NCBI RefSeq assembly: GCF_006345805.1
Contig: NC_043002.1
Span: 34,906,001 to 34,970,000, forward strand
Length of the DNA stretch: 64,000 bases
Direction of reading: 5' to 3'
Origin: Octopus sinensis
Lineage: Eukaryota
A model generated the notes under the pieces. That model ran no database searches, was not told the DNA's origin, and saw nothing but the letters and a program-made list of their open reading frames with translations. Below are positions 10,248 through 63,670 of this stretch, one piece after another. A program made the position numbers and the translations under genes. The number at the start of each line of letters is the position of its first letter. Position 1 is the first letter of the stretch.

Positions 10248-13200
10248 CACAACGGTGGTAGCAGGGAAGTGTATCAGACTGCCAGAAGGGAAGCTAGGAG
10301 ACAGGTCTATCTAGCCAGAGGGGAAGCAGATAAAAGAAAATTTGCCAATGTCCTGCGCCGTGAGGATGAAAGACTTGAGGTATTTCGTGTTGCAAGACAG
10401 TGTGTGAGAGAGAATCGAGATGTGGTAGGAGAGAATGTGTTCGCATGGAGGATGGTTCACTTGCGCTAAATGAGGATGCAAAGAGAGAAGCTTGGAGACG
10501 CCACTATGAAAGGTTGCTGAATGAGGAAAATGAATGGGATAAAGAGAGTCTGCCGAATGTTGACCCAACAGAGGGACCAGCTATCCGAGTTGATAGTTCC
10601 GTGGTAGCTAAGGCAATTAGAAGCATGAAGACAGGGAAAGCCCAGGCCCATCAGGAATTACTGCAGAGATGCTCAAAATATCTGGTAGTGTCGGCTATAG
10701 CATAGTCACCCGTATAGTTAACCAGGTGATACACGAAGGAGTCATACCCAATGACTGGTGTAGCAGCATAATAGTCAACTGCTACAAAGGTAAAGGCGAT
10801 GCCCTAGATACAAATAACTACAGGGGCATCAAGCTGTTGGATCAGGTAATGAAGGTTACGGAGAGGGTTATAGCCCAGTTAATTAGAGAGAGAGTTAGCT
10901 TAGATGATATGCAGTTTGGGTTCGTGCCAGGGAAAAGTACTACTGATGCTATATTCCTGGTAAGACAGCTGCAGGAGAAATACCTAGCCAAGGTAAGCCC
11001 TTGTACCTGGCTTTTGTTGACTTAGAGAAAGCCTTTGACAGGGTCCCCCGATCCCTTATCTGGTGGTCAATGAGGAAACTAGGGATAGATGAATGGTTAG
11101 TGAGAGCTGTGCGAGCCATGTACAGAGACGCAGCTAGTAAGGTGAGGGTTGGCAACGAGTACAGTGAAGAATTCCGGGTAGAGGTTGGGGTCCACCAAGG
11201 TTCAGTCCTCAGCCTCCTCCTATTATCATAGTCCTCCAGGCAATAACGGAAGAATTTAAGACAGGATGCCCCTGGGAGCTCCTATATGCTGATGACCTTG
11301 CTCTAATTGCTGAGTCACTATCAGAACTGGAGGAGAAGTTTCAGGTGTGGAAACAAGGATTAGAATCGAAGGGCCTTAGAATCAACCTAGCCAAAACCAA
11401 AGTCCTAATAAGTAGGAAGGTGGACCAACCACAAACGACTTCAGGTAGATGGCCCTGCTCGATCTGTAAAAAAGGTGTAGGTAGAAACTCTATAAGGTGC
11501 ACCAAGTGTAAGCTATGGACACATAGAGGTGCAGCAATGTCAAAGGAAGGCTAACTAAGAAAATAGTTTTTGTCTGTGGCAGATGCTCAGGAGAAATAAA
11601 CACTGGAAATGTGCAGAGACCAACTTCTACCACGTTCCAGGGAGACAAACTAGAAGTAGTTGATAGCTTCCGCTACCTAGGAGACCAAGTCAGTAGCGGG
11701 GGTGGGTGTGCTGAAAGTGTAACTGCTAGAGTAGAATAGCCTGGGCAAAGTTTAGAGAGCTCTTACCCCTGCTGGTGACAAAAGGCCTCTCGCTAAGAGT
11801 AAAAGGCAGACTATATGATGCGTGTGTACGTACAGCCATGCTACATGGTAGTGAAACATGGGCCGTGACAGCTGAGGATATGCGTAAGCTTGCAAGAAAT
11901 GAAGCCAGTATGCTCCGATGGATGTGTAATGTCAGTGTTCATAATCGTCAGAGTGTAAGTACTTTGAGAGAAAAGTTGAACCTAAGAAGTGTCAGTTGTG
12001 GTGTGCAAGAGAGACGGCTGCGCTGGTATGGTCATGTGACGAGAATGGCTGAAGATAGTTGTGTGCAAAAGTGCTACACCCTAGCAGTTGAGGGAACCTG
12101 TGGAAGAGGTAGACCCAGGAAAACCTGGGACGAGGTGGTGAAGCACGACCTTCGAACTTTAGGTCTCACCAAGGAAATAACTGAAGACCGAGTCCTATGG
12201 AAGTGTGCTGTGCATGAGAGGACCCGGCAGGACTAGTCAGGCCATATCCCGTGGCCCCTACCTGGGACGTAGTCGATCCACCTGTGCATACCTTCCTTCT
12301 TGTGACACTTGTGAAGACCTGCTGAGGCAAGTGAAAATCAATCAAAATAGATGAACATCAATGGAATTTGTATCTTTGTGTTACCAATGCCTGTGGCACA
12401 CAAGAAAACCATCCGAACGTGGCCGTAGCCAGTACCGCATCGACTGGCCTCCGTGCTGTGGGAACATGGTGGCACATAAAAACACCATCCGAAGACCCGG
12501 CAAGACTAGTCAGGTCATAACCCGTGGGCCCTACCTGGGACGTAGTCAGTCCACCTGTACATACCTTCCTTCTTGTGACACTTGTGAAGACCTGTTGAGG
12601 CAAGTGAAAATCAAAAAAAAAATCAAATCAAAACAAATCAAAATAGATGAACATCAATGGAATTTGTATCTTTGTGGTACCAGTGCCGGTGGCACACAAG
12701 AATCCATCCGAACGTGGCCGTAGTCAGTACCGCTTGTGGTACCAGTGCCGGTGGCACACAAGAATCCATCCGAACGTGGCCGTAGTCAGTACCGCTTGTG
12801 GTACCAGTGCCGGTGGCACACAAGAATCCATCCGAACGTGGCCGTAGTCAGTACCGCATCTGGGCCATCGTGCTGTGGCACATAAAAACACCATCCGGTC
12901 GTGGCCGTAGCCAGCCTCATCTAGCGCCTGTGTCGGTGGCACATAAAAAGTAATCCGAGACCGGCAAGACTAGTCAAGCAATAAACCATGGCCCTACCTG
13001 GGACGAGTCAGTCCACTGTGCATACTTCCTCCTTGTGCTACTTGTGAAGGCCTGTTGAGGCACGTGAAATCAAAATCAAATCAATCAAAACAAATCAAAA
13101 TAGATGAACATCAAGGAATTGTATCTTTGTGGTACCAGGCCGGTGGGACAAGAGAAAACCATCTGAAAGTGGCCGTAGCCAGTACTGCATCGACTGGCCT

Positions 13201-31215: not shown

Positions 31216-31884
31216 ATTAATATAATATAGTTGATAAATATGATAATATTTTCCATGCTAAATGAATTATTCTTCCAATAGATGTGATTCTACAGAAGAT
31301 ATTTTGACCTTTAAGTCATGAAACAGTTTAGTTGTATGCTAATGTAAATGTTTTGTTAAATCTACATTTTTAACTACTCACTTATATCTTATACTGTTTC
31401 TTTATTATTTCAGAACATCAGATGACATCAGATTTAAAGAATTTTTAACCTTAGGTACACTGTCATTAGTTATCATATTTTGAAGACTAATGGAAGAAAC
31501 TACATGCAGCTGATAAAAGGTCTGTTTATAATAACTGTTAAGATTACAGTAAAATATTTCCTCTGAAATGAGACTAAAAGCATAATTTCTCTAATTCACT
31601 GCTGGGAATCTGTACAAGATGATTTTACATTCCAATTAAACTTGGACATATTTACAAAGGTGTTTGAGGCATTTTCAGATACTGATGAAGATCATATTGA
31701 TGGAAGTATGGCTGAAGAAATATTTGTTTGGAATAAACTATAACACAAATAAAAGACTGTAGCCATATGATATGGTTAAAGAAAAAAAACCATTGGGAAA
31801 ATAAACTGTGTGAGAAATTTAAAAGGTTAACTTTTTTCATCTGAAGAGATAGGACATTCATTATAGTACTGTGATATTTCTGAA

Positions 31885-33423
31885 ATGTCTCTAAAAAGAA
31901 ACCTAACTACTGGAGAGAAGCCATATCACCGTGATATCTGTGGTAAATCATTTTTGAATGGAAGTCACTTAATTAGACACAAACACATTGATACAAGTGA
32001 GAAACCATATCGTTGTGATATTTGCAATAAATCATTTTCTAATGACAAGCATATAGCTAGACACAAATGCATTCATACTGGAGAGAAGCCACATCAATGT
32101 GATATCTGTGGTAAATCATTCTCACAGAGTGGTGACTTGATTATTCACAAACGCAGTCATACAGGAGAGAAACCATATCACTGCAATATCTGTGGTAAAT
32201 CATTCTGCCATGGAAAAGCCTTAAATATTCACAAACACATTCATACTGGAGAGAAACTATATCATTGTGACGTTTGTAGTAAATCATTCTCTGAAAATGG
32301 TCACTTAACTAAACACAAACGTATTCATACTGGAGAGAAACCACATCATTGTGATATCTGTGGAAAATCTTTCTCTTTAAATGGCCACTTAACTAAACAC
32401 AAATACATTCATACAGGAGAGAAACCATATCGTTGTGATATTTGTGGTAAATCATTCTCTCAAAATTATCACTTAACTGTACACAAGCGAATTCATACAG
32501 GAGAGAAACCATATCGTTGTGATATCTGTGGTAAATTATTTTCGGATGGAAGTCACTTAATCAGACACAAACGCGTTCATACAGGAGAGAACCCATATCA
32601 TTGTGATATTTGTGGTAAATCATTTTCTGATGGAAGTCACTTAACTGCTCATATACGTATTCATACTGGAGAGAAGCCATATCATTGTGATATCTGTGAT
32701 AAATCATTCTCTCAGAAAAGTAATCTCACTGTTCACAAACATATTCATACAGGAGACAAACCATATTATTGTGATATCTGCGGTAAATCTTTTTCTAGAA
32801 GTGGTGACTTAACTACTCACAAACACATTCATATGGGTGACAAGCCATATTGCTGTGACATCTGTGGTAATTCATTCTCTCAAAATTATCACTTAACTAC
32901 ACACAAACGAATTCATACAGGAGAGAAACCACATCACTGTAACACCTGTGGTAGGTCCTTCTCTCATAGAAATGCCTTAAATACTCACAAACGCATTCAC
33001 ACAGGAGAGAAACCATATCAGTGTGATATCTGTGGTAAGTCATTCCCTCATGCAAATACCTTACTTATTCACAAACAAATTCATATAGGAGAGAAGCCGT
33101 ATCACTGTGATATATGTGGTAAAACTTTTACTTTCACTAGTGACTTAGAGAAACACAAATGCATTCATGATGGAAAAAAAACATATCATTGTGATATATG
33201 TGGTAAATTATTTTCGGATGGAAGTCATGTAGCTAGACACAAACGCATTCACACAGGGGAGAAACCATATCCCTGTGATATTTGTGGTAAGTCATTTTCC
33301 GTTAGTTGTAACCTAACTACTCACAAACGTATTCATACTGGAGAAAAGCCATATCATTGTGGTATCTGTGATAAATCATTCTCTCAGAAAAGTAATTCGC
33401 CACTCACAAGCTCATTCATTTAG
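31885..33423 (+). CDS. Poly-C2H2 zinc-finger protein, 512 aa: 16 intact fingers, one degenerate N-terminal finger and one frameshift-truncated C-terminal finger
   Basis: 28-aa repeats Y-x-CDICGKSF...H-x3-H with HTGEKP linkers (13 + 17x28 + 23 = 512). Single coding exon with no effector domain seen, typical of the coleoid C2H2 expansion. The true start and upstream exons are uncertain. Confidence 0.92.
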
Positions 33424-34678: not shown

Positions 34679-35968
34679 CGAGGGACGTTCAATAAGTAAT
34701 GCCTCTGACCCACTTGCAGTTGTTGGATCTAGCTGAAATTTTGCATGTGCAATCATTTATATCTCTATAGAGTAAGTGGCAAATTACAGCTCTGAATTAC
34801 TTGTGGTTTCTGATTTACAGGTGTTTGAACCGAGTCAAGTGTGAAATGGAGCCTGTTGAGTGTTGAGCAGTGATCCGGTTTTTGTATTTGAAAGGACGCA
34901 CACCACGGGAGACTTTTGATGAAATGAAAGTAACTTATGGTGATGATGCCCCATCATATGACCTTGTAAAACGCTGGCATCGTGAATTCAAACATGGTTG
35001 GAACTCTGTGGAAACAGCTCCCAGATCTGGTCGCCCCTTCTGCCATTAATGACGCATCTGTCCGTCAAGTTGAGGCTGCCATTTTGGAAGATCGACGCAT
35101 AATTATTCGCCAAATAGCCCATGAGGTCAAGATTAGTACCGGATCTGTGGAAACTATCATTCATGACCATTTGCATATGCAAAAGGTGTCTGCCAGATGG
35201 ATTCCCAGGTTGCTCACGCCTTTCCAGAAGCAAGAACGCGTCGAGTGCTCGAGGGTGAATTTGGAGATGTGCCAAGAAGATGAGTCAAAATTTTTCAAAA
35301 GACTGATTACACAGGATGAAACCTGGGTCCATCACGATGATCCAGAGACCAAAGCCCAGTCAATGCAGTGGAAGCACCGGGACTCACCCCCTCCAAAGAA
35401 GGCAAGGGTGCAGCCCTCCGCTGGCAAGGTCATGCTCACAGTCTTCTGGGACCAGGACGGAGTAGTGATGACAGATTTCCTGGCAAAGGGTACCACAATT
35501 GCAGGAGCCTATTATGCTTCACTTTTGAGGAAATTAAGAGAAGTTATCAAAATCAAGAGGTGGGGCAAGATCAGCAAAGACATCCTCCTCCTGCAGGACA
35601 ACGCTCCGGTCCACAACTCGCTTGTCGCCAGATCAGAAGCACAGGCGTATGGCTATGAACTCCTCCCCCATCCTCCTACTTTCCTGACCTTGCACCCTCT
35701 GATTTTCACCTCTTCCCAGTCATGAAGTTGTTTTTGAAAGGAAAGCGTTTCCCAGATGATGCAGCCTTGATTTCTGAAGTCACGTTCAGGTTGGAGGACC
35801 AAGCTGGGGTCTTCTACAAAAACGGTCTCCAGAGCTGCATCAAACAATGGGAGAAATGCGTAACTCTGGGTGGTTCCTATGTAGAAAAAGACTAATAACT
35901 GTGCCAAGTTTCGTTGCTCTACTGCTATGGGAAGTGGGTCAGGGGCATTACTTATTGAACGCCCCTCG
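34679..35968 (+). mobile_element. Full-length mariner (DD34D), 1290 bp; transposase pseudogene 34846-35895
   Basis: ~37-bp TIRs CGAGGG(A/G)CGTTCAATAAGTAATGCC(T/C)CTGACCCACTT with TA duplications. WIPRLL, DETW, DNA and (Y)xPDLAPSD motifs, with 34 residues between the 2nd and 3rd D. One early TGA and two frameshifts (~35040, ~35678). Confidence 0.95.
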
Positions 35969-51571: not shown

Positions 51572-51665
51572 TGCCCGCAGAGGGACTCGAACCCCCGACC
51601 CTCAGATAACTTAACTGCTTCCTTTCATTAAAAGTCTGATGCTCTACCGACTGAGCTATGCAGGC
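51572..51665 (-). tRNA. tRNA-Lys(UUU), 21-nt intron (51608-51628), copy 1
   Basis: GCCTGCATAGCTCAGTCGGTAGAGCATCAGACTTTTA[ATGAAAGGAAGCAGTTAAGTT]ATCTGAGGGTCGGGGGTTCGAGTCCCTCTGCGGGCA. Full cloverleaf with two G-U wobbles and a T4 terminator downstream. Confidence 0.9.
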
Positions 51666-51971
51666 TTCCGACCTTCCGCTTTAACTTTTAGACAAATGAA
51701 ATATTTTGGACTCAGCTACACATTCCTTGTTAACTGAAACGATTGTTGCATAGAGCTGTCATCTGATATCTTACGTCACCCCGTAGTGATTACTAATAAT
51801 TCCTTCACATTTACTGCTGATATTTAATATAGTAATTCGTTCACTCATCAAGTCCCATCCTGGTAAAGTCATATTGGTCATTCAAAATGTATATACACTA
51901 CTCTCTTTCAATTATAATCCTTTCTACTCTAGGCACAAGGCCCGACATTGACAAAGTTACACTGAGTCTTA

Positions 51972-52266
51972 AAAATTCCCTTCGGTCACGAATGACCAAG
52001 AAAGTTCCTCTCCGAGTCACAAGTCCGGGCAAGGTTGTTTGTCGAATACCAGTCAGTCCTTTCCACAACGCTGATGTTGTCCAAGAAAACGACAAAGGCC
52101 GATTCAGTTTGGCAACAGTAATGTCGCAAATTATTTCTACTGCTAAGTGAACTGGAGCAATATGAAATGAAGTGTCTTGCTCAGAAACACAACTCATAGT
52201 CCGGTCTAGGAATCGAACTTACAACATCACGATTGTAAGCCCAATGTTCTAACCACTGAGCCATGC
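51972..52266 (-). mobile_element. SINE family S2 (diverged)
   Basis: Reverse complement of the 7184 element, including GCATGGCTCAGTGGTTAGA. Confidence 0.7.
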
Positions 52267-52693
52267 ATCTTCACAAAAAGGTCATCGTAAAGCCACAACG
52301 GAGAATCGAACTTTGTATCTCTCAAATTATCTTGAAAACACCTAATAATTTATAAACATCTAATGTTAAAGTGGAAAAATTATCAGAACATTTTTCTATT
52401 CAGTTTTGCAAATATAGAATACTGTACGATTGACTATTTGTTTTACTACTACTACTACTACTACGACTACTACTACTACAACACACACACACACGCACGT
52501 GTATCTCCCTTTGCAGGATAGAGGACGCCGTGATGGTGTCAAGCCTATCTGGCGACGTTGATGTTCGCCTGGGGCTAAATGCAACAGTAACACCCCCACC
52601 ACCCTGCCCTGTCCCTAGCCATATTCAGATGGCTTTAGTCCCTTATGTTATGGAGCAGTTACTGTCTATATCTCATTTAGAGAATTATTATTG

Positions 52694-52733
<40 letters not shown>

Positions 52734-53230
52734 ATAATTAAGGGTAAAATCAATTAGTTATTAATTAATTTCACCAAGTATTTCTCAGTATGTAAAAACC
52801 ATTCAAGGCGTATTCAAAATATTTCACGTGGATGGGAGGGGAAGGTACATAGATTCTTTACTTGCACTGTTTGAATTCGCTGGCACTATCAGTTTGGAGG
52901 TGTTCGTCTGAGGTGATTCATGTCGGATGAATATGTTCATTATTTTTAGTGCTTTCAAATCCAAACAAGAAATGTTGAGCTGACGAAAGAAATGTCGAGT
53001 TTTAATTCGGCTAATCTAGAAACGTTGAACGTTCTCAAATAATCTTTGTACTTGTGATATTTTGTTGTTTTCCCTCCATGTCTACGTGAGTTATTTTTGA
53101 GTAAGCACTTTCAGGGAGATTCTTCTTAAAGTAGTAGAAATGGCTAAACAAAAATTTTTTTTGGCTGCTATTTCTAAAAATTTCAGTATGTGGCAAAGTA
53201 AATTATTTTACTAAGCCCTTAATTATATAA

Positions 53231-53298
<68 letters not shown>

Positions 53299-53491
53299 GA
53301 GAAAAAGAAGAAAAAAGAAAAAAATGACGTACAGAAGTTGATTATTCATAGAAATTTAAATTCATGCAGAGAAATTCCTGCATACAGCTGTTTCCACACC
53401 TAATCAATTGAAATATGGAAATGTAAATTCCAATCTTTGAAACCAGTTAATTGGATATTTCTTCATGGACAACTTCCAAAAGAAACTACGT

Positions 53492-53583
53492 CGCCTGCAG
53501 AGGGTCTTGAACCCGCGACCCTCAGATTTCATAACTCGACAGTTCTTAAAAGTCTGATGCTCTACCGACTGAGCTATGCGGGC
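53492..53583 (-). tRNA. tRNA-Lys(UUU), 19-nt intron, copy 2 (C4-A69 and C50-U64 mismatches)
   Basis: Exons match eukaryotic tRNA-Lys(UUU); intron AGAACTGTCGAGTTATGAA at 53528-53546. Confidence 0.8.
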
Positions 53584-54008
53584 TTCAACCGCTAGATTTA
53601 ACTTTTAGACAAATGAAATATAATGGACTTAGCTACACATTCCTTGTTAAAGGAAACGATTGTTGTATAAAGCTGTCATCTGATATCTTATGTTACCCCT
53701 TAGTGGTTTCTAATAACTCCTTCAAATTTACTACTGATATTTAATATAGTAATTCGTTCATTCATCAAGTCCCATCCTGGTAAAGTCATATTGATCATTC
53801 AAAATGTATATACACTATTCTCTTTCAATTATAATCTTTTCTACTCTAGGCACAAGGCCCGACATTTTTGTGGAGGGTGCCACTCGAATAGATCGACCCC
53901 AGAGCGCAGGTGGTATAATATAGCACTGTACCTATGCCTGTGTTTAGCCCCTTGTGGGTAATAAAGAAATAGGTATAATATAGCCCTCATCTGTTTCAGT
54001 TGCATCAC

Positions 54009-54248
54009 GAAAACTATGTTATGAAGTATTTTTCCATATTTCTCCTGAAGGAGGTGTCATTTTTTGGACATTTGTAGAAGGGAAAGATCTTAAATTTTCC
54101 TTCTCCACATGTATCTGGGTATTTACTCAGTGAAACACCTAGAAACATGTGGAGAAGGAAAATTTAAGATCTTTCCCTTCTACAAATGTCCAAAGAATGA
54201 CACCTCCTTCAGGAGAAATATGGAACAATACTTCATAACAAAGTTCTC
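54009..54248. repeat. 240-bp fold-back element, copy 1 (95-bp core arms 54018-54112 / 54145-54239, 2 mismatches)
   Basis: Direct arm comparison; CAC on both flanks. Confidence 0.95.
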
Positions 54249-54327
54249 CACCAAATTGAATGGGTGAAAATATTTCTATAATATTTTGTACTAGATGAAG
54301 GACGAAATTTGTAAAGTAAGTTGTATT

Positions 54328-54360
<33 letters not shown>

Positions 54361-54576
54361 CACACAAACAGTACTACACATATGTACATATAAATAAATA
54401 AAAACACTCTTTCATCCAGATTCTCCAACCCATATCAGCACAGGTATCAAACATTGGATTGAAAGACTCACCAGTTGCAAAAATGTAAACACATTTTTTT
54501 CTTCTTTCCCTCCTCCTCCTCCTTCCTTTCATTCCCTTTCCCATTTGACACACCTTTCAGATACACAGACACCCAC

Positions 54577-54639
<63 letters not shown>

Positions 54640-54881
54640 CTCTCTCTCTCTCACACAAGACAATGATAAAAAAAGAAATCCAGACAATTTTTTGAAAAGT
54701 GACATTTTGCTCCCCTTGGAGTGACCAGCTGGGTTTGCCATTTCTAAAAGCCAATAATCACTTACCATTGAAAGACTGACCAGCTGCAAAGATATCAGCA
54801 AATTTTTTTCTTCTTTCTCTCCTTCTTCTTCCTTTCCTTCTCTTTTTCTTTAAAACTTCTCTAAGATACAAAAACACACAC

Positions 54882-54926
<45 letters not shown>

Positions 54927-55194
54927 TTCTCCCCATTCTTCACCCTCTTGTAGTATCTTAAAATCTCTCCCCGCCCCTACACACTCAATAATACTATAAA
55001 AGGAGACAAAATTCCTGCAAAAGTTCAATTTGAAAACTCCACTAGAGTGGACCAAAGCGCTTTTATATGATATATGATTCATAAAAAATGTAACATACTA
55101 ATAAATATCTGTAAATATAAAACCATCCAGCAAATATAAAACCAACCAGTCAATTGGGCATTTCTTCTGCAACAATTTCCAAAAGAAAAATCGT

Positions 55195-55286
55195 CGCCCG
55201 CAGAGGGACTTGAACCCGCGACCCTCAGATTTCATAACACGACAGTTCTTAAAAGTCTGATGCTCTACCGACTGAGCTATGCGGGC
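55195..55286 (-). tRNA. tRNA-Lys(UUU), 19-nt intron, copy 3
   Basis: GCCCGCATAGCTCAGTCGGTAGAGCATCAGACTTTTA[AGAACTGTCGTGTTATGAA]ATCTGAGGGTCGCGGGTTCAAGTCCCTCTGCGGGCG, then ACGATTTTTCTTTT terminator. Confidence 0.92.
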
Positions 55287-55462
55287 CGACATGCGATTCA
55301 ACCAACATTTAGATAGATTAAATCTTTTGAACTTAGCTAATATATACCAACGTACATACATACACACAAGCATACATACATATATACATACATACATTCA
55401 TACATACATACATACATACATACATACATACATACATACATACATACACAAACAATACTCAG

Positions 55463-55549
55463 ATGAAATCTGAGGGTCGCGGGTTCAAATTCTTCTGGGG
55501 GCAACGAGATTTCTTTTGGAAATTGGTCCAGAAGAAATAACCAATTGAC
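55463..55549 (+). pseudogene. Inverted copy of the tRNA 3' half plus 3' trailer
   Basis: ATGAA-ATCTGAGGGTCGCGGGTTCAAATTCTTCTGGGGGC...TTCTTTTGGAAATTG...CCAATTGAC is an imperfect reverse complement of 55149-55235. Confidence 0.85.
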
Positions 55550-55639
55550 AGGTTTCAAACAAGGAGGGGGCCAGTCGAATAGATCGACTCCAGTACGCAG
55601 GTGGTTTAATATAGCCATCAGTTATTTCAGTTGCAACAC

Positions 55640-55879
55640 GAGAACTATGTTATGAAGAATTTTTCCATATTTCTCCTGAAGGAGGTGTCATTCTTTGGAC
55701 ATTTGTAGAAGGGAAAGATCTTAAATTTTCCTTCTCCACATGTATCTGGGTATTTACTCAGCGAAACACCAAGAAACATGTGGAGAATGAAAATTTAAGA
55801 TCTTTCCCTTCTACAAATGTCCAAAGAATGACACCTCCTTTAGGAGAAATATGGAACAATACTTCGTAACAAAGTTCTC
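55640..55879. repeat. 240-bp fold-back element, copy 2
   Basis: Same arms as 54009-54248 with a few substitutions. Confidence 0.95.
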
Positions 55880-55958
55880 CACCAAATTAAATGGGTGAAA
55901 ATATTTCTATAATAATTTGTACTAGATGAAGGACCAATTTTGTAAAGTAAATTGTATT

Positions 55959-56018
<60 letters not shown>

Positions 56019-56242
56019 ACAAACAGTACTACACATATGTACATATACATAAAGAAAATCACTCTTTCATCCAGGTTCCCCAACCCATATCAGCACAGGT
56101 ATCAACCATTGGATTGAAAGCCTCACCAGTTGCAAAAATGTAAACACATTTTTTTTTCTTTCCCTCCTCCTCCTTCCTTTCATTCCCCTTTCCCATTTGA
56201 CACACTTTTCAGATACACAGACACCCACACACACGCGCACAT

Positions 56243-56295
<53 letters not shown>

Positions 56296-56851
56296 CACAC
56301 ACGCGCGCGCGCGCGCACCCTCTCTCTCTCCTCTCAGAAGACAATGATAAAAAAGAAATCCAGATAATTATTTGAAAAGTGACATTTTGCTCCCCTTGGA
56401 GTGACCAGCTGGGTTTGCCATTTTTAAAAGCCAATAATCACTTACCATTGAAAGACTGACCAGCTGCAAAGATATCAGCAAATTTTTTCTTCTTTCTCTC
56501 CTTCTTCTCCCTTTCCTTCTATTTTTCTTTAACACTACTTTAAGATACAAAAACACACACGATCTCTCTCTCTCACTCTCTCTCTCTCTCTCTCTCTCTC
56601 ACTTTCTCCACATTCTTCACCCTCTTGTAGAATCACATATCTCTACCCGCCCCTACACACTCAATAATACTAGAAATGGAGACAAAATTCTTGCAAAAGT
56701 TCAATTTGAAAACTCCACTAGAGTGGACGAATGCGCTTTTATATGATATATGATTCATAACAAATGTAACATACTTATAAATATCTGTAAATATAAAACC
56801 AACCAGTCAATTGGAAATTTCTTCTGCAACAATTTCCAAAAGAAAAAACGT

Positions 56852-56943
56852 CGCCCGCAGAGGGACTTGAACCCGCGACCCTCAGATTTCATAACACGGT
56901 AGTTCTTAAAAGTCTGATGCTCTACCGACTGAGCTATGCTGGC
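56852..56943 (-). tRNA. tRNA-Lys(UUU), 19-nt intron, copy 4 (A4-G69 mismatch)
   Basis: Intron AGAACTACCGTGTTATGAA; 5' end GCCAGCA. Confidence 0.78.
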
Positions 56944-57083
56944 TGACACACAAAACAACGAAAATTTAGATAGATTAAATCTTTTGAACTTAGCTAATAT
57001 ATACATACGTACATACATACATACATACATACATACATACATACATACATACATACATACATACACACACAAACAATACTCAG

Positions 57084-57118
57084 ATGAAATCTGAGGGTCG
57101 CGGGTTCAAATCCCTCTG
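57084..57118 (+). pseudogene. Inverted, truncated tRNA 3' half
   Basis: ATGAAATCTGAGGGTCGCGGGTTCAAATCCCTCTG. Confidence 0.8.
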
Positions 57119-57719
57119 ATTATTTAATCCCATTGATTATTTAAGATTTTCATTTTTTACCAAAGGACATCTATCTATATAAATATCTTGTTTTCTGGCA
57201 CTAATATTACAATATCTTAAAATGTAATAATCAATAGTGTTGCTCTTAATGCGCAGCAGTGGTGCAACGAAGTTTAATATATGAAAATACATGATAATAT
57301 AAGAGGAGCCATTGTGTGTGATTTTAGATGGCTGAAATGGATCTAGTACCATGTAAATGTATGTTTCTTTATAGATGAAAACTGTAGTCAGAGATCTATA
57401 CTCATGCTTCACAGAATTACCAGGACCGTCAGTTAATTTACTTGTGACAATGATTAAATTTTACTTGTTTCAGTAATTAGACTGTGGCCGAAGATGATGA
57501 CATAGCGTGGTAGGAATAAAAGAGCAAAAGACTGAATGCTAAGGGAAATAGAAGAGCGTAAAAATATTTCGAAAGACCGGAAGGACATAGCCAAGCTGGA
57601 AAACGTGATGGGCAGCAAGAAAGGATTGAGCAAAAAGGGAAAGCAATTGTAACAGTTGCCGGGTGAAAATGTGTTCGACTACGAGAAAAAAAAAATGGTA
57701 TTGCAAGAAAATAATATGT

Positions 57720-57811
57720 CACCCGCAGAGGGACTTGAACCCTCGACCCTCAGATTTCATAACACGACAGTTCTTAAAAGTCTGATGCTCTACCGACTGA
57801 GCTATGCGGGC
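57720..57811 (-). tRNA. tRNA-Lys(UUU), 19-nt intron, copy 5 (perfect T-stem, G1-U72)
   Basis: T arm GAGGG-TTCAAGT-CCCTC; intron as in copy 3. Confidence 0.85.
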
Positions 57812-58325
57812 TTCCTCTCGTCCAGTTTAACTTTTAGGCAACTGAAATATTATGGACTTAGCTAGACATTCCTTGTTAACTGAAACGATTGTTGCATAGA
57901 GCTGTCATCTGATATCTTATGTCACACCGTAGTGATTACTAATAATTCCTTCACATTAACTACTGGTATTTAATATAGCAATTCGTTCACTCATCAAGTG
58001 CCATCCTGGTAAAGTCATATTGGTCATTCAAAATGTATATACACTACTCACTTTCAATTATAATCTTTTCTACTCTAGGCACAAGGCCCGACATTTTTGT
58101 GGAGGGGCCAGTCGAATAGTTCGACCCCAGTGCGCAGGTGGTATAATATAGATAGAAAGATGATAGAAAAAAATGATGTACAGAATGTTTTATTGAAAGA
58201 AATTCGAATACCTGCTTACACTTGTTTCCACACCTAATGAATTCAATTCAAGAATTTTAAGTTCTCACATCTGAAAACAGTTAATTGGGTATTTCTTCAA
58301 GGTCATTTTCGAAAAGAGAAGTCGT

Positions 58326-58416
58326 CGCCCGCAGAGGGACTTAACCTGCGTCCCTCAGATTTCATCAATCTAAAGTTCTTAAAAGTCTGATCCTCTACCG
58401 ACTGAGCTATACGGGC
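58326..58416 (-). pseudogene. tRNA-Lys(UUU) pseudogene with intron, copy 6
   Basis: 1-nt deletion in the T loop (GGTTAAG, B-box broken), D-stem mismatch and a diverged intron AGAACTTTAGATTGATGAA. Confidence 0.8.
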
Positions 58417-58685
58417 TGTCAAGCGTTTCAGCGAAAAGTTAGATAGATTAAATCTTTTGAACCTATCTACTATATACATACGTACATATATACAAACATA
58501 CATACATACAATACTACTTGCAATGGTTACATTGCAATGGTTACATTTCTACTCGAGGCACAAGGCCCGACATTTCTGTAGAGGGGGCCAGTCGAATAGA
58601 TCGACCCCAGTGCGCAGGTGTTTAGCCCATTGTGGGTAATAAAGAAATGGGTATAACATAGTCTCATCTGTTTCAGTTGCATCAC

Positions 58686-58924
58686 GAGAACTATGTTATG
58701 AAGTATTTTTCCATATTTCTCCTGAAGGAGGTGTCACTCTTTGGACATTTGTAGAAGGAAAAGATCTTAAATTTTCCTTTCCACATGTATCTGGGTATTT
58801 ACTCAGTGAAACACCTAGAAACATGTGGAGAAGGAAAATTTAAGATCTTTCCCTTCTACAAATGTCCAAAGAATGACACCTCCTTCAGGAGAAATATGGA
58901 AAAATACTTCATAACAAAGTTCTA
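58686..58924. repeat. Fold-back element, copy 3 (239 bp)
   Basis: Same arms with a 1-nt deletion in the left arm. Confidence 0.93.
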
Positions 58925-59252
58925 CACCAAATTAAATGGCTAAAAATGTTTCTATAATATTTTGTACTAGATGAAGGACCAAATTTGTAAAGTAAATTGT
59001 ATTAAACACACACACACACACACACACACATATGCACACAAACAGTACTACACATATGTACATATAAATAAATAAAAACACTCTTTCATCCAGATTCTCC
59101 AACCCATATCAGCACAGGTATCAAACATTGGATTGAAAGACTCACCAGTTGCAAAAATGTAAACACATTTTTTCTTCTTTCCCTCCTCCTCCTCCTTCCT
59201 TTCATTCCCTTTCCCATTTGACACTTCCTTTCAGATACACAGACACCCACAC

Positions 59253-59323
<71 letters not shown>

Positions 59324-59568
59324 ACACTCTCTCTCTCTCACACAAGACAATGATAAAAAAAGAAATCAAGACAATTTTTTGAAAAGTGACATTTGGCTCC
59401 CCATTGGAGTGACCAACTGGGTTTGCCATTTCTAAAAGCCAGTAATCACTTACCATTGAAAGACTGACCAGCTGCAAAGATATCAGCAACTTTTTTCTTC
59501 TTTCTCTCCTTCTTCTTCCTTTCCTTCTCTTTTTCTTTAAAACTTATTTAAGATACAAAAACAAACAC

Positions 59569-59609
<41 letters not shown>

Positions 59610-59878
59610 TTCTCCCCATTCTTCACCCTCTTGTGGTATCTTAAAATCTCTCCCCGCCCCTACACACTCAATAATACTATAAAAGGAGACAAAATTCCTG
59701 CAAAAGTTCAATTTGAAAACTCCACTAGAGTGGACCAAAGCGCTTTTATATGATATATGATTCATAAAAAATGTAACATACTAATAAATATCTGTAAATA
59801 GAAAACCATCCAGCAAATATTAAACCAATCAGTCAATTGGGCATTTTCTTCTTGGACAATTTCCAAAAGAAAAATCGT

Positions 59879-59972
59879 CGCCCGCAGAGGGACTTGAACC
59901 CGCGACCCTCAGATTTCATAACACGGCAGTTCTTAAAAAAGTCTGATGCTCTACCGACTGAGCTATGCGGGC
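59879..59972 (-). tRNA. tRNA-Lys(UUU), copy 7, with 2 extra T in the anticodon loop (pseudogene or homopolymer error)
   Basis: Six A at 59935-59940 where intact copies have four; otherwise like copy 3. Confidence 0.65.
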
Positions 59973-60140
59973 CGACATGCGATTCAACGAAAATTTAGAT
60001 AGATTAGATCTTTTGAACTTAGCTAATATATACCTACGTACATACATGCACACAAGCATACATACATATATACATACATACATGCATACAAACATACATA
60101 CATACATACATACATACATACATACACAAACAATACTCAG

Positions 60141-60227
60141 ATGAAATCTGAGGGTCGCGGGTTCAAATCCTTCTGGGGGCGACGAGTTTTCTTTTGGAAA
60201 TTGGTCCAGAAGAAATAACCAATTGAC
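60141..60227 (+). pseudogene. Inverted tRNA 3' half plus trailer
   Basis: Paralogue of 55463-55549. Confidence 0.85.
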
Positions 60228-60316
60228 AGGTTTCCAACAAGGAGGGGCCAGTCGAATAGATCGACTCCAGTACGCAGCTGGTTTAATATAGCCATCAGTT
60301 ATTTCAGTTGCAACAC

Positions 60317-60556
60317 GAGAACTATGTTATGAAGTATTTTTCCATATTTCTCCTGAAGGAGGTGTCATTCTTTGGACATTTGTAGAAGGGAAAGATCTTA
60401 AATTTTCCTTCTCCACATGTATCTGGGTATTTACTCATCGAAACACCTAGAAACATGTGGAGAAGGAAAATTTAAGATCTTTCCCTTCTACAAATGTCCA
60501 AAGAATGACACCTCCTTCAGGAGAAATATGGAAAAATACTTCATAACAAAGTTCTC
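60317..60556. repeat. 240-bp fold-back element, copy 4 (95/95 perfect arms 60326-60420 / 60453-60547)
   Basis: Direct arm comparison. Confidence 0.95.
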
Positions 60557-60634
60557 CACCAAATTAAATGACTGAAAATATTTCTATAATATTTGTACTA
60601 GATGAAGGACCAAATTTGTAAAGTAAATTGTATT

Positions 60635-60670
<36 letters not shown>

Positions 60671-60894
60671 ACAAACAGTACTACACATATGTACATATAC
60701 GTAAAGAAAATCACTCTTTCATCCAGGTTCTCCAACCCATATCAGCACAGGTATCAAACATTGGATTGAAAGCCTCACCAGTTGCAAAAATGTAAACACA
60801 TTTTTTTTTCTTTTCCTCCTCCTCCTTCCTTTCATTCCCCTTTCCCATTTGACACACTTTTCAGATACACAGACACCCACACACACGCGCACAT

Positions 60895-60951
<57 letters not shown>

Positions 60952-61213
60952 CGCGCGCGCCCGCGCACCCTCTCTCTCTCTCTCTCAGAAGACAATGATA
61001 AAAAAGAAATCCAGTTAATTATTTGAAAAGTGACATTTTGCTCCCCTTGGAGTGACCAGCTGGGTTTGCCATTTTTAAAAGCCAATAATCACTTACCATT
61101 GAAAGACTGACCAGCTGAAAAGATAACAGCAAATTTTTTCTTCTTTCTCTCCTTCTTCTCCCTTTCCTTCTATTTTTCTTTAACACTACTTTAAGATACA
61201 CAAACACACACGA

Positions 61214-61255
<42 letters not shown>

Positions 61256-61505
61256 ACTTTCTCCCCATTCTTCACCCTCTTGTAGAATCATATATCTCTA
61301 CCCGCCCCTACACACTCAATAATACTAGAAAAGGAGAGAAAATTCTTGCAAAAGTTCAATTTGAAAACTCCACTAGAGTGGACGAATGCGCTTTTATATG
61401 ATATATGATTCATAACAAATGTAATATACTTATAAATATCTGTAAATATAAAACCAAAAAGTCAATTGGACATTTCTTCTGTAACAATTTCCAAAACAAA
61501 AACGT

Positions 61506-61597
61506 CGCCCGCAGAGGGACTTGAACCCGCGACCCTCAGATTTCATAACACGGTAGTTCTTAAAAGTCTGATGCTCTACCGACTGAGCTATGCGGGC
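61506..61597 (-). tRNA. tRNA-Lys(UUU), 19-nt intron, copy 8
   Basis: Exons as in copy 3; intron AGAACTACCGTGTTATGAA. Confidence 0.9.
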
Positions 61598-61709
61598 TGA
61601 CACACAAAACAACGAAAATTTAGATAGATTAAATCTTTTGAACTTAGCTACTATATACCTACGTACATACATACATACATACATACATACATACACAAAC
61701 AATACTCAG

Positions 61710-61744
61710 ATGAAATCTGAGGGTCGCGGGTTCAAATCCCTCTG
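61710..61744 (+). pseudogene. Inverted, truncated tRNA 3' half
   Basis: Paralogue of 57084-57118. Confidence 0.8.
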
Positions 61745-62305
61745 ATTATTTAATCCCATTGATTATTTAAGATTTTCATTTTTTACCAAAGGACATCTAT
61801 CTATATAAATATCTTGTTTTCTGGCACTAATAATACAATATCTTAAAATGTAATAATCAATAGTGTTGCTCTTAATGCGCAGCAGTGGTGCAACGAAGTT
61901 TAATATATGAAAATACATGATAATATAAGAGGAGCCATTGTGTGTGATTTTAGATGGCTGAAATGGATCTAGTACCATGTAAATGTATGTTTCTTCATAG
62001 ATGAAAACTGTAGTCAGAGATCTATACTCATGCTTCACAGTATTACCAGGGCCGTCAGTTAATTTACATGTGACAATTATTATATATTATTTGTTTCAGT
62101 CATTAGACTGTGGCCGAAGATGATGACATAGCGTGGTAGGAATAAAACAGCAAAAGACTGAATGCTAATGGAAATAGAAAACGTGATGGGCAGCAAGAAA
62201 GGATTTAGCAAAAAGGGAAAGCAATTGTAACAGTTGCAGGGTGAAAATGTGTTCGACTAAGAAAAAAAAAAAAGAAGAAATGGTATTGCATGATAAAAAT
62301 TGTGT

Positions 62306-62397
62306 CGCCCGCAGAGGGACTTGAACCCGCGACCCTCAGATTTCATAACTAGACAGTTCTAAAAAGTCTGATGCTCTACCGACTGAGCTATGCGGGC
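62306..62397 (-). tRNA. tRNA-Lys(UUU), 19-nt intron, copy 9 (A37 replaced by U)
   Basis: Five A at 62361-62365; intron AGAACTGTCTAGTTATGAA. Confidence 0.7.
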
Positions 62398-62784
62398 TTC
62401 CGTCCGTTCAGTTTAACTTTTAGACAAATGAAATATTATGGACTTAGCTAGACATTCCTTGTTAACTGAAACGATTGTTGTATAAAGCTGTCATCTGATA
62501 TCTTACGTCACCCCGTAGTGATTACTAATAATTCCTTCACATTTACTACTGATATTTAATATAGTAATTCGTTCACTCATCAAGTCCCATCCTGGTAAAG
62601 TCATACTTGTCATACAAAATGTATATACACTACTCTCTTTCAATTATAATCATAACAATGTTCTCCACCAAATTAAATGGCTTAAAATATTTCTATAATA
62701 ATTTGTACTAGATGAAGGACCAATTTTGTAAAGTAAACTGTATTAAACACACAGACACACACACAAAAACACAGACACACACAG

Positions 62785-62815
<31 letters not shown>

Positions 62816-63044
62816 CACACAAACAGTACTACACATATGTACATATACATAAATATTAATAATCTTTCATCCAGATTCTCCAACGCACATCAGCACAGGA
62901 ATCAAACACTGGATTGAAAGATTTATACAGTGGTATAAATGTCAACACAATTATTTCTTCTTCTTCTCTTTCTTCTATCTTCCTTCTCCAGCGACAACCC
63001 TTCCAGATACACAGGCATCCACACACACATGTGCACACACACGT

Positions 63045-63082
<38 letters not shown>

Positions 63083-63578
63083 CAATGACAAAAAGAAATC
63101 CAGACAATTTTTGGAGAAGTGACATTTTGTCCCCCTTGAAGTGGCCAATTGAGTTTGCCATTTCTAAAAGCCAAGTGTCACTTACCATTGAAAGACTGAC
63201 TAGCTGCAAAGATATCAACAAATTTTTTCTTCTTTCTCTCCTTCTTCCTTTCCTTCTCTTTTCTTTAACACACCTTTAAGATACAAAAACACACATGATC
63301 TCTCTCTCTCACGTTCTCCCCATTCTTCACCCTCTTGTAGTATCTTATCTCTCCCCGCCCCTACACACACAATAATGCTATAAAAGGAGACAAAATTCCT
63401 GCAAAAGTTCAATTTGAAAACTCCACTAGAGTGGAGCAAAGCGCTTTTATATGATATATGATTCATAAAAAATGTAACATACTAATAAATATCTGTAAGT
63501 ATAAAACCATCCAGCAAATATAAAACCAACCAGTCAATTGGACATTTCTTCTGCGACAATTTCCAAAAGAAAAATCGT

Positions 63579-63670
63579 CGCCCGCAGAGGGACTTGAACC
63601 CGCGACCCTCAGATTTCATAACGCAGCAGTTCTTAAAAGTCTGATGCTCTACCGACTGAGCTATGCGGGC
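63579..63670 (-). tRNA. tRNA-Lys(UUU), 19-nt intron, copy 10
   Basis: Exons as in copy 3; intron AGAACTGCTGCGTTATGAA; T5 terminator. Confidence 0.9.

What the first reader, a model, noticed from the sequence alone, without database searches (positions are those of the whole stretch)
51572..63670. Tandem array of ten intron-containing tRNA-Lys(UUU) genes in an animal genome
Seen: ten co-oriented copies whose exons fold as tRNA-Lys(UUU), each with a 19-21 nt insert between positions 37 and 38 and an oligo-T terminator downstream. Relative to human tRNA-Lys(UUU), the exons show compensatory pairs (C6-G67, G49-C65), which argues for real genes and not a SINE. Known: in human, fly and worm, tRNA introns are confined to Tyr(GUA), Ile(UAU) and Leu(CAA), plus Arg(UCU) in vertebrates, whereas Lys(UUU) introns are familiar from yeast. 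Inference: a lineage-specific intron gain followed by array amplification would put AAA decoding under TSEN/RtcB splicing control. I cannot tell whether this is already annotated.
Basis: partly seen in the sequence, partly recalled or inferred. Interest (0 to 1): 0.82.

Follow-up and report, generated by a model that had tools for sequence, protein, structure and literature searches.

The report
Intron-containing lysine tRNA gene array
This is one block of a large tandem cluster of real lysine-tRNA (anticodon UUU) genes that each carry a short, standard tRNA intron. Model animals lack this intron in this tRNA, but it turns out to be the rule across this octopus-like genome and common in other marine animals.

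Summary
Ten co-oriented tRNA-Lys(UUU) genes lie on the minus strand at 51572-63670 (Rfam tRNA, 35-64 bits). Each has a 19-21 nt insert between positions 37 and 38 and an oligo-T run downstream. Three more copies follow beyond the window.

The inserts behave as standard eukaryotic tRNA introns. Across 118 intron-bearing Lys-UUU copies in this genome (66 distinct introns, at least 10 unalignable families on several chromosomes), G sits at intron position -3 in 117. That G is the partner of C32 in the anticodon-intron pair. Exons are 10-15 times less variable than flanks.

Only 3 of the 10 window copies match the consensus exactly. Two carry structure-compatible variants and five carry lesions.

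The intron is older than this array, which is one of three 96-97% identical segmental duplicates on the same chromosome. The same intron position also occurs in at least 96 animal-type Lys-UUU genes on environmental contigs.

An exact-core census found 90 genes with the insert and 10 without. Of those ten, about four keep an intact cloverleaf, so dependence of AAA decoding on splicing is likely large but not shown to be total.

Verdict: a new member of a known kind, of moderate interest.

The parts
51572..51665 (-). tRNA-Lys(UUU) gene t1. It has a 21-nt intron (ATGAAAGGAAGCAGTTAAGTT) unrelated to the other nine. Its exons form a variant isodecoder: U4.G69, G50.U64, G57 and A73.
   Evidence: RF00005 63.1 bits; ARAGORN Lys(ttt) i(38,21). 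The identical gene heads the paralogous array at C6:34584862-34584955 (locus L045, 1862-1955).
53492..53583 (-). tRNA-Lys(UUU) gene t2 with a 19-nt intron. It has a C4.A69 acceptor mismatch and U60>A, so it is probably impaired.
   Evidence: RF00005 51.2 bits, with non-standard pairs flagged; sequence.
55195..55286 (-). tRNA-Lys(UUU) gene t3 with consensus exons. The 5' exon is 55250-55286, the intron 55231-55249 (AGAACTGTCGTGTTATGAA) and the 3' exon 55195-55230.
   Evidence: RF00005 59 bits. The exons are identical to the genome-wide consensus. TCTAAA lies at about -27 to -22, and a T5 run starts 5 nt downstream.
56852..56943 (-). tRNA-Lys(UUU) gene t4 with a 19-nt intron. C4>A gives an A4.G69 mismatch.
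   Evidence: RF00005 53.8 bits.
57720..57811 (-). tRNA-Lys(UUU) gene t5 with a 19-nt intron. The variant A50-U64 closes the T-stem mismatch, and G1.U72 is a wobble pair. This is the best-scoring copy.
   Evidence: RF00005 63.6 bits with no non-standard pair flagged. Closely related A50/U72 variants occur in the paralogous arrays: L043 8213 shares the GAGGG 3' exon but has a damaged 5' acceptor strand, and L046 9434 and L048 3285 read GAAGG.
58326..58416 (-). Decayed copy t6: a D-stem break, T-arm substitutions and a one-base deletion in the T loop. It is a pseudogene.
   Evidence: RF00005 35.3 bits with four flagged pairs; alignment.
59879..59972 (-). tRNA-Lys(UUU) copy t7 with two extra T after the anticodon. 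Cutting at the usual distance from the tRNA body would leave U37 in place of A37.
   Evidence: 57.8 bits.
61506..61597 (-). tRNA-Lys(UUU) gene t8 with consensus exons and a 19-nt intron.
   Evidence: RF00005 59 bits.
62306..62397 (-). tRNA-Lys(UUU) copy t9 with A37>T. The same variant occurs in the paralogous arrays.
   Evidence: 58 bits. L043 2395 and 3695, L047 3693 and L048 7841 carry the same change.
63579..63670 (-). tRNA-Lys(UUU) gene t10 with consensus exons and a 19-nt intron.
   Evidence: RF00005 59 bits.
53838..62651 (-). Two copies of a ~4.7-kb higher-order repeat (53838-58065 and 58546-62651). Each is built from basic units of about 1.6 kb, with microsatellite-rich spacers.
   Evidence: Self-BLAST gives 92.6% identity over 4259 nt, and the basic units are 76-91% identical along whole spacers. 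Microsatellites are listed.
54009..54248 (.). A 240-bp near-perfect palindrome (116-nt arms, 8-nt loop) that recurs once per repeat unit in the spacers.
   Evidence: The reverse-strand self-hits place further copies at about 58686, 60317 and 69500 (the last lies past the window end).

Best explanation
The region is one block of a large, tandemly duplicated cluster of nuclear tRNA-Lys(UUU) genes transcribed by RNA polymerase III. The genome is of the octopus lineage, and nearly all stand-alone genes for this tRNA in it carry a short standard intron between positions 37 and 38.

The proposed steps are as follows (all inferred from sequence unless noted):
1. Each unit is transcribed from internal A and B boxes, helped by an AT-rich TATA-like element about 25 nt upstream. 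Transcription stops at the oligo-T run 5-15 nt downstream.
2. The tRNA splicing endonuclease (TSEN) binds the mature tRNA body and cuts at fixed distances from it. The 3' cut depends on the pair between C32 and the G three bases before the intron's end (the anticodon-intron pair).
3. RtcB joins the two halves. The product is a 73-nt tRNA-Lys(UUU) identical to the one encoded by the few intronless copies.

About half of the ten window copies look able to do this: three with consensus exons and two compatible variants. The rest are decaying duplicates, as is usual in large tRNA arrays.

Shown here: gene structure, intron position, conservation of the pairing G, strong constraint on exons relative to flanks, and presence of TSEN and RtcB genes. 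Not shown: transcription, splicing and use in translation.
For: 1. tRNA identity. There are ten RF00005 matches at 35-64 bits and three more just past the window.

2. Intron position and the pairing rule. All inserts lie after position 37. Across 118 intron-bearing copies in the genome (66 distinct introns, at least 10 families by single linkage), G is at -3 in 117 and a purine at -5 in all 118. The rest of the intron is free to vary. PMC10485636 states that eukaryotic introns lie invariably at 37/38 and that only this proximal anticodon-intron pair is conserved and critical.

3. Selection on exons. In 50 comparable chromosome-6 copies the pairwise diversity per site is:
- upstream flank 0.41
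- 5' exon 0.025
- intron 0.13 (concentrated at intron positions 7-11, with the last six bases almost invariant)
- 3' exon 0.044
- downstream flank 0.45

4. The same 73-nt mature sequence is kept at loci whose introns cannot be aligned with one another.

5. Pol III signals. T4 or longer lies within 25 nt downstream in 91 of 94 clustered copies, including all 13 of this array. AT-rich elements lie at about -30 to -20 in every cluster.

6. DNA-level tandem duplication. Homology runs through the spacers, and 5-9 kb blocks are 96-97% identical to two other arrays 0.33-0.43 Mb away on the same chromosome.

7. The genome has RtcB and tRNA-endonuclease genes.

8. A retrocopy of the mature, intronless tRNA ends in CCA plus A7 and is flanked by a 15-nt target-site duplication (C1:162485736). 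A processed tRNA with this acceptor stem therefore existed in the germ line.

9. The same design recurs elsewhere. There are 96 animal-type intron-bearing Lys-UUU genes on environmental contigs, all with G at -3. Another eukaryote has a tandem unit of Glu(CUC), Lys(UUU) with intron and Tyr(GUA) with intron.
Against: - No RNA data were available, so transcription and splicing are inferred.
- Half of the window copies carry lesions. Only 21 of 94 clustered copies have perfect consensus exons, and 51 are within one difference.
- The consensus itself has a C50.U64 mismatch in the T stem.
- For the intron family in this window, the free-energy fold pairs U33-A37 with the intron's last bases and A38. 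That buries the 3' splice site in a helix and does not leave the expected 3-nt bulge. Beyond C32:G(-3) the expected helix has only U34:A(-5). Other families in the genome form 3-5 bp in the expected register, checked by eye.
- Low exon diversity could be partly due to gene conversion and not to selection.
Confidence: 0.8

Rival explanations
1. The array is an inert tandem repeat of tRNA pseudogenes. Working tRNA-Lys(UUU) would come from the few intronless copies or from other clusters, and the insert would be a tolerated lesion, not a processed intron.
For: - Five of the ten window copies have damaging changes.
- Two-thirds of the chromosome-6 copies differ from the consensus.
- Intronless copies with perfect or near-perfect exons exist: C1:195243437, C14:50690349, C6089:1601 and C6:51529216.
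- The fold of this intron family is not textbook.
Against: - Exons are 10-15 times less diverse than flanks.
- The intron's last six bases are almost invariant, while its middle varies.
- G at -3 is kept in 117 of 118 copies across unrelated intron families and in 125 of 125 environmental copies. A lesion would not be conserved in this way.
- Terminators are kept in 91 of 94 clustered copies.
- Six of the ten exact-core intronless copies have a broken acceptor stem or a damaged T arm, and most abut interspersed-repeat sequence.
Confidence: 0.12
2. The copies are heads of a tRNA-Lys-derived SINE or another retroposon, not genes.
For: - Several dispersed Lys-UUU copies elsewhere in the genome are followed by shared repeat bodies.
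- tRNA-Lys-related SINEs are known from cephalopods (my recollection of work by Ohshima and Okada; not checked here).
- The first look for tRNA-like sequence gave 619,363 candidates genome-wide.
Against: - Units are head-to-tail, with homology through the entire 0.6-1.9 kb spacers and a 4.7-kb higher-order period.
- Each tRNA is followed at once by a terminator and unit-specific DNA.
- None of the five repeat bodies occurs between 49 and 64 kb, although they are dense in the first 45 kb of the window.
- No A-rich tail or target-site duplication bounds the copies.
Confidence: 0.03
3. The copy number is inflated by assembly error. The window array would be an uncollapsed haplotype or a misjoined duplicate of the array at C6:34.58-34.63 Mb.
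For: The two arrays begin with the same unusual 21-nt-intron gene and share the order of intron variants. Blocks are 96-97.4% identical.
Against: - Divergence of 3-4% with mosaic block order, plus an inverted third array, looks like real segmental duplication and not allelic copies.
- Even if true, this changes the count and not the nature of the genes.
Confidence: 0.1

Closest known systems
Standard eukaryotic nuclear tRNA introns cut by TSEN and joined by RtcB. In model animals these occur in Tyr(GUA), Ile(UAU) and Leu(CAA), plus Arg(UCU) in vertebrates.
   Same: - The position is exactly between nucleotides 37 and 38.
- The length (8-25 nt) is in the usual range.
- The sequence is unconserved except for the base that pairs with position 32.
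- The genes have Pol III terminators.
- TSEN and RtcB genes are present.
   Different: - The host tRNA is Lys(UUU), which is not among the intron-bearing tRNAs that PMC12168002 singles out for animals.
- About 90% of the gene copies in this genome carry the intron.
- The intron family in this window has a very weak anticodon-intron helix beyond the C32:G pair.
The yeast (fungal) tRNA-Lys(UUU) intron
   Same: Same isoacceptor and same 37/38 position. PMC6582322 is a study of intron removal from the ten intron-bearing yeast tRNA species (abstract seen). That Lys-UUU is one of the ten is my own knowledge.
   Different: - The intron sequences show no detectable similarity.
- Fungi ligate with Trl1/Tpt1, whereas animals use RtcB.
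- Whether the animal and fungal introns share ancestry or arose separately cannot be told from these data.
Tandem tRNA gene arrays in animal genomes, such as the Xenopus 3.18-kb tRNA repeat and the zebrafish chromosome 4 clusters (my own knowledge)
   Same: Head-to-tail units of about 1-5 kb, amplified by unequal crossing-over, holding a mixture of intact and decayed copies.
   Different: This array is a single-isoacceptor array in which every copy carries an intron. The unidentified eukaryote in the Rubritalea MAG has a mixed Glu/Lys/Tyr unit instead.
tRNA-derived SINEs of cephalopods
   Same: The sequence is a tRNA-Lys(UUU) and the copy number in the genome is high.
   Different: The window copies are tandem DNA duplicates. 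They have terminators, no SINE body, no tail and no target-site duplications.

Membership tests
Nuclear tRNA gene (Rfam RF00005 cloverleaf) | Covariance-model score above the curated gathering score, with all four arms present | tested here: met
   Ten matches at 35.3-63.6 bits against a gathering score of 29, each covering model positions 1-71.
Nuclear tRNA gene (Rfam RF00005 cloverleaf) | Lys(UUU) identity: anticodon loop CUUUUAA after removal of the insert, and a body close to known animal tRNA-Lys(UUU) | tested here: met
   ARAGORN in intron mode calls Lys(ttt). The spliced sequence differs from human tRNA-Lys3, as I remember it, at five positions: 6, 49, 50, 65 and 67.
Pol III type 2 (tRNA) gene | Internal A and B boxes, and an oligo-T terminator shortly downstream | tested here: met
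   TAGCTCAGTCGG and GGTTCAAGTCC are invariant or nearly so. T4 or longer lies within 25 nt in 13 of 13 copies of this array and 91 of 94 clustered copies. Promoter activity itself was not tested.
Standard eukaryotic (TSEN-type) tRNA intron | Located between nucleotides 37 and 38 | tested here: met
   True of all ten window copies and of all 98 intron-bearing copies read in full in the genome. The rule is stated in PMC10485636.
Standard eukaryotic (TSEN-type) tRNA intron | Anticodon-intron pair between nucleotide 32 and intron position -3 | tested here: met
   C32 with G(-3) in 10 of 10 window copies, 117 of 118 copies genome-wide and 125 of 125 environmental copies.
Standard eukaryotic (TSEN-type) tRNA intron | 3' splice site exposed in a small bulge next to an anticodon-intron helix | tested here: inconclusive
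   The constrained minimum-energy fold of this window's intron family pairs U33-A37 with the intron's last bases and A38, and does not leave the bulge. Other families of the genome give 3-5 bp in the expected register with a 3-nt bulge (registers checked by eye).
Standard eukaryotic (TSEN-type) tRNA intron | Removed in vivo by TSEN and RtcB to give a mature tRNA | not testable with these tools
   Only indirect support is available. Genes for both enzymes are present, and a CCA-tailed intronless retrocopy of this tRNA exists.
Archaeal-type bulge-helix-bulge intron | A strict motif of 3-nt bulge, 4-bp helix and 3-nt bulge around both splice sites | tested here: not met
   In this window's family only C32:G(-3) and U34:A(-5) can pair in the central helix.
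tRNA-derived SINE | Dispersed copies made of a tRNA head, a tRNA-unrelated body and a tail, bounded by target-site duplications | tested here: not met
   The units are tandem, with homology through the spacers. No repeat body occurs in 49-64 kb.

The most novel reading that the evidence does not exclude
The Lys(UUU) intron is an old feature of a large animal clade (cephalopods and probably many other marine invertebrates) in which essentially all working tRNA-Lys(UUU) must be spliced. It would have been lost in vertebrates, insects and nematodes, and might share ancestry with the fungal Lys(UUU) intron. If so, the 'animal set' of intron-bearing tRNAs drawn from model organisms is a derived, reduced state. 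The Lys(UUU) intron may then be kept for a reason such as an intron-dependent modification of this heavily modified tRNA.
Probability: 0.3. Interest if true: 0.65.

Novelty: new member of a known kind. Interest (0 to 1): 0.45.

Why it matters
Textbook lists of intron-bearing animal tRNAs come from a few model species. In this genome about 90% of the genes for one of the most heavily used and most heavily modified tRNAs (Lys-UUU, which reads AAA in an AT-rich genome) need splicing. The same appears true of many unsampled marine animals.

That gives a natural system for asking why tRNA introns persist. Possible answers include intron-dependent modification, quality control, and regulation of AAA decoding through TSEN/RtcB.

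The genome also supplies a ready-made comparative test. More than 60 distinct introns sit in one tRNA, and they show which intron positions are under constraint. The result also warns annotators that bacterial-mode tRNA finders miscall these genes: ARAGORN's default called five of the ten 'tRNA-Stop' or 'tRNA-Ile' and missed three altogether.

Tried and rejected
- ARAGORN in its default bacterial mode found only seven of the ten copies and miscalled five of them (Ile, Stop) because it does not model the intron. Intron mode fixed this.
- A fuzzy-regex gene finder missed copies or timed out. I replaced it with short-query BLAST of the two exons.
I did not try another route, so only their central 50 nt were used.
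- Taxonomic placement of the environmental contigs failed. The LRR protein of L089 has only unnamed metagenome relatives, and no paper mentions the sample identifiers.
- The C2H2 zinc-finger ORF was useless for naming the organism. A LINE fragment pointed to octopus instead.
- Literature searches for Lys-UUU or tRNA introns in molluscs and cephalopods found nothing relevant. The supplement of PMC12168002 is not held.
- The idea that all intronless copies are SINE heads was weakened. It fits the five copies sharing the AATGGCGGTGCCCCAGCATGG body. The SINE carrying 'body 5/4', however, normally has a non-Lys head.
- I saw no support from covariation for a hairpin inside this window's intron family. 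The variants at intron positions 5 and 13 break the proposed stem and are not compensated (by eye).

Full report
**The observation.** Rfam's tRNA model finds ten matches in the window. All lie on the minus strand between 51572 and 63670, at 35.3-63.6 bits against a gathering score of 29. Each has a 20-24 nt insertion in the anticodon loop. ARAGORN's bacterial default found only seven of these and miscalled five of them. With intron search on, it calls tRNA-Lys(ttt) with an intron of 19 or 21 nt at position 38. The alignment gives a 37-nt 5' exon ending CUUUUA, the insert, and a 36-nt 3' exon beginning AUCUGA. All copies have T4 or longer within 25 nt downstream. The array continues for three more copies past the window end and stops there; nothing was found 30 kb further on either side.

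**Integrity of the ten copies.** Three copies (55195, 61506, 63579) have exons identical to the genome-wide consensus.
- Copy 57720 has A50, which closes a T-stem mismatch, and a G1.U72 wobble. It scores best.
- Copy 51572 has a different 21-nt intron and four exon changes that keep pairing (U4.G69, G50.U64, G57, A73).
- The other five carry an acceptor-stem mismatch (53492, 56852), many lesions (58326), two extra T in the anticodon loop (59879) or A37>T (62306).

**The organism.** The window is C6:34906001-34970000 of a 2.72-Gb assembly with 13,516 sequences. A LINE fragment in the window is 75-79% identical to Octopus vulgaris and O. bimaculoides proteins, against 52% or less for any other named taxon. 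From memory, the assembly statistics match Octopus sinensis, but I could not verify that.

**Genome-wide picture.** An exact search for the exon core with a gap of 1-31 nt gave 100 matches and none for the reversed control. Ten are intronless and 90 carry an insert.

I read 98 intron-bearing copies in full and took the central part of 20 more. This gave 66 distinct introns of 8-25 nt (mode 19). They fall into at least ten families that cannot be aligned with each other. They lie at:
- three arrays on C6 (34.507-34.546 Mb, 34.585-34.633 Mb, and the window array at 34.957-34.975 Mb)
- C10 0.65-0.69 Mb
- C10 21.88-22.05 Mb
- single sites on other chromosomes

All of these loci encode the same 73-nt mature sequence apart from an A/G change at position 57.

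**Are the inserts real introns?** PMC10485636 states that eukaryotic tRNA introns lie invariably between 37 and 38. It also states that only the proximal anticodon-intron pair is conserved and critical for excision. Here G occupies intron position -3, where it can pair with C32, in 117 of 118 copies and 65 of 66 distinct introns. Position -5 is a purine in all copies, while other positions vary freely. Conservation of one base across unrelated intron sequences is what selection for cutting by the splicing endonuclease predicts.

**Evidence of constraint.** Among 50 comparable chromosome-6 copies, pairwise diversity per site is 0.41 upstream, 0.025 and 0.044 in the two exons, 0.13 in the intron and 0.45 downstream. 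Intron variation is concentrated at positions 7-11, and the last six bases are almost fixed. Gene conversion may contribute to this. Conversion does not explain identical exons at loci with unrelated introns.

**Weaknesses.** For the intron family in this window, the expected helix beyond C32:G(-3) has only U34:A(-5). The minimum-energy fold prefers a register that buries the 3' splice site. Other families form 3-5 bp in the expected register.

**Promoter, terminator and enzymes.** The A and B boxes are invariant. An AT-rich element lies about 20-30 nt upstream in every cluster; in this array it is TCTAAA, with two invariant A. Terminators are present in 91 of 94 clustered copies. The genome has a multi-exon RtcB gene and genes with the tRNA-endonuclease catalytic domain. 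Transcription and splicing themselves are inferred.

**Origin of the array.** Units share homology through their whole spacers. Basic units of about 1.6 kb are 76-91% identical, and a 4.7-kb higher-order unit is repeated at 92.6% identity. Blocks of 5-9 kb are 96-97.4% identical to the arrays at 34.583-34.624 Mb (same strand) and 34.536-34.547 Mb (inverted). The odd 21-nt-intron gene heads both the window array and the 34.585 Mb array. None of five interspersed-repeat bodies that are dense in the first 45 kb of the window occurs in the array. This is DNA-level tandem and segmental duplication, not retroposition.

**The intronless copies.** Of the ten exact-core intronless copies, five are followed after a short T-run by a shared ~50-nt repeat body. 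Three of those five have a damaged cloverleaf; the other two (C1:195243437 and C6089:1601) do not. Three further copies have broken acceptor stems or a damaged T loop and abut other repeats. Two (C14:50690349 and C6:51529216) stand alone. In all, four of the ten keep an intact cloverleaf. Another copy, C1:162485736, ends in CCA plus A7 and is flanked by a 15-nt target-site duplication. It is therefore a retrocopy of a mature, processed tRNA. So a few intronless templates exist, and total dependence of AAA decoding on splicing is not shown. By gene count the intron-bearing form dominates roughly 9 to 1.

- Ninety-six copies have animal-type sequences (GCCCGG...GGGCG). They comprise 21 distinct mature sequences and 73 distinct introns, all with G at -3, and 94 have terminators.
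- Their contigs carry eukaryote-type ORFs, including a cyclin-dependent-kinase-inhibitor domain and an extracellular LRR protein. I could not place them taxonomically.
- A contig filed under a Rubritalea MAG holds 14 tandem 1054-bp units. Each has tRNA-Glu(CUC), an intron-bearing tRNA-Lys(UUU) and an intron-bearing tRNA-Tyr(GUA). This is clearly eukaryotic DNA.

The Lys(UUU) intron is therefore not peculiar to this genome.

**Comparison with what is known.** PMC12168002 surveyed GtRNAdb. It reports that animal tRNA introns are concentrated in Tyr(GUA), Ile(UAU) and Leu(CAA), with kingdom-specific patterns for Arg(UCU) and Met(CAU). [quoted passage not shown] Five literature searches found nothing on tRNA introns in molluscs. 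Automated annotation very likely already records these genes.

**Verdict.** This is a standard kind of element, a 37/38 tRNA intron in Pol III genes arranged in tandem. It sits in a host tRNA and a clade where it has not been discussed. I call it a new member of a known kind, with moderate interest.

Noticed in passing
window 51572-63670 and all Lys-UUU loci read (L001, L007-L057): The consensus tRNA-Lys(UUU) of this genome has a C50.U64 mismatch in the T stem. The mismatch is kept at every locus whatever the intron family. Fifteen of 96 animal-type environmental copies also have a pyrimidine-pyrimidine mismatch at 50:64, and five of them share the same GCGGG/CCCTC T stem (L133, L152, L153 and two in L158).
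   Followed up: partly
L014 (G000 C1:162485736-162485808): An intronless tRNA-Lys(UUU) copy ends in CCA plus A7 and is flanked by a 15-nt direct repeat (AAATCTTCCCTTATC). It is a retrocopy of a mature, CCA-tailed tRNA.
   Followed up: partly
L007, L008, L009, L012, L013 (dispersed sites in G000): Five intronless Lys-UUU copies are followed, after a short T-run, by the same ~50-nt body (AATGGCGGTGCCCCAGCATGGCCACAGCTCGTGAGCTGAAACTA) and an A-rich tail. This looks like a short SINE with a tRNA-Lys head.
   Followed up: partly
L057 (C10:21878486), L037 (C13:59976408), L036 (C10695:69474): Dispersed Lys-UUU copies that still carry an intron are followed directly by bodies of other tRNA-like interspersed repeats. 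They may be retroposed unspliced transcripts, or repeats inserted into the terminator T-run. About 20 more dispersed intron-bearing copies could not be read.
   Followed up: no
window 54009-54248; also near 58686 and 60317, and L001 near 5500: A 240-bp near-perfect palindrome (116-nt arms, 94% complementary, 8-nt loop) recurs once per repeat unit in the spacers of the array. It looks like a MITE.
   Followed up: partly
L178/L179 (CBDBEG010000035.1, filed as 'MAG: Rubritalea sp.'): A 14.4-kb contig in a bacterial MAG consists of 14 tandem 1054-bp units. Each unit holds tRNA-Glu(CUC), an intron-bearing tRNA-Lys(UUU) and an intron-bearing tRNA-Tyr(GUA). This is eukaryotic DNA mis-binned into a bacterial genome.
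   Followed up: partly
L071, L075, L100, L116, L126, L131, L146, L173 (metagenome contigs of up to 97 kb): Intron-bearing tRNA-Lys(UUU) genes with a different acceptor stem (GCCTT...) lie on AT-rich, gene-dense contigs with long ORFs of up to 844 aa. These contigs look nothing like animal DNA and may be large DNA viruses or protists. Their introns also have G at -3.
   Followed up: no
L065 (OFDO01002803.1): A tRNA-Lys(UUU) almost identical to human tRNA-Lys3, but with a 22-nt insert at 37/38, lies next to a 325-aa ORF that by eye resembles bacterial HisI/RsmH. The contig may be a chimeric assembly.
   Followed up: no
window 1-45000: The rest of the window is dense in interspersed repeats, with at least 40 matches to five repeat bodies. 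It also holds a 518-aa open frame of 15 or more C2H2 zinc fingers (31867-33423), a mariner-type transposase remnant (34970-35725) and a LINE fragment (11730-12236). The tRNA array itself is free of these repeats.
   Followed up: partly
G000 C9077:57603-58931 and C2292:174097-174867: Besides the multi-exon RtcB gene on C6:111.444-111.457 Mb, there are nearly intron-free RtcB-like stretches on two unplaced scaffolds. One of them has six in-frame stops. They may be retrocopies or contaminant DNA.
   Followed up: no
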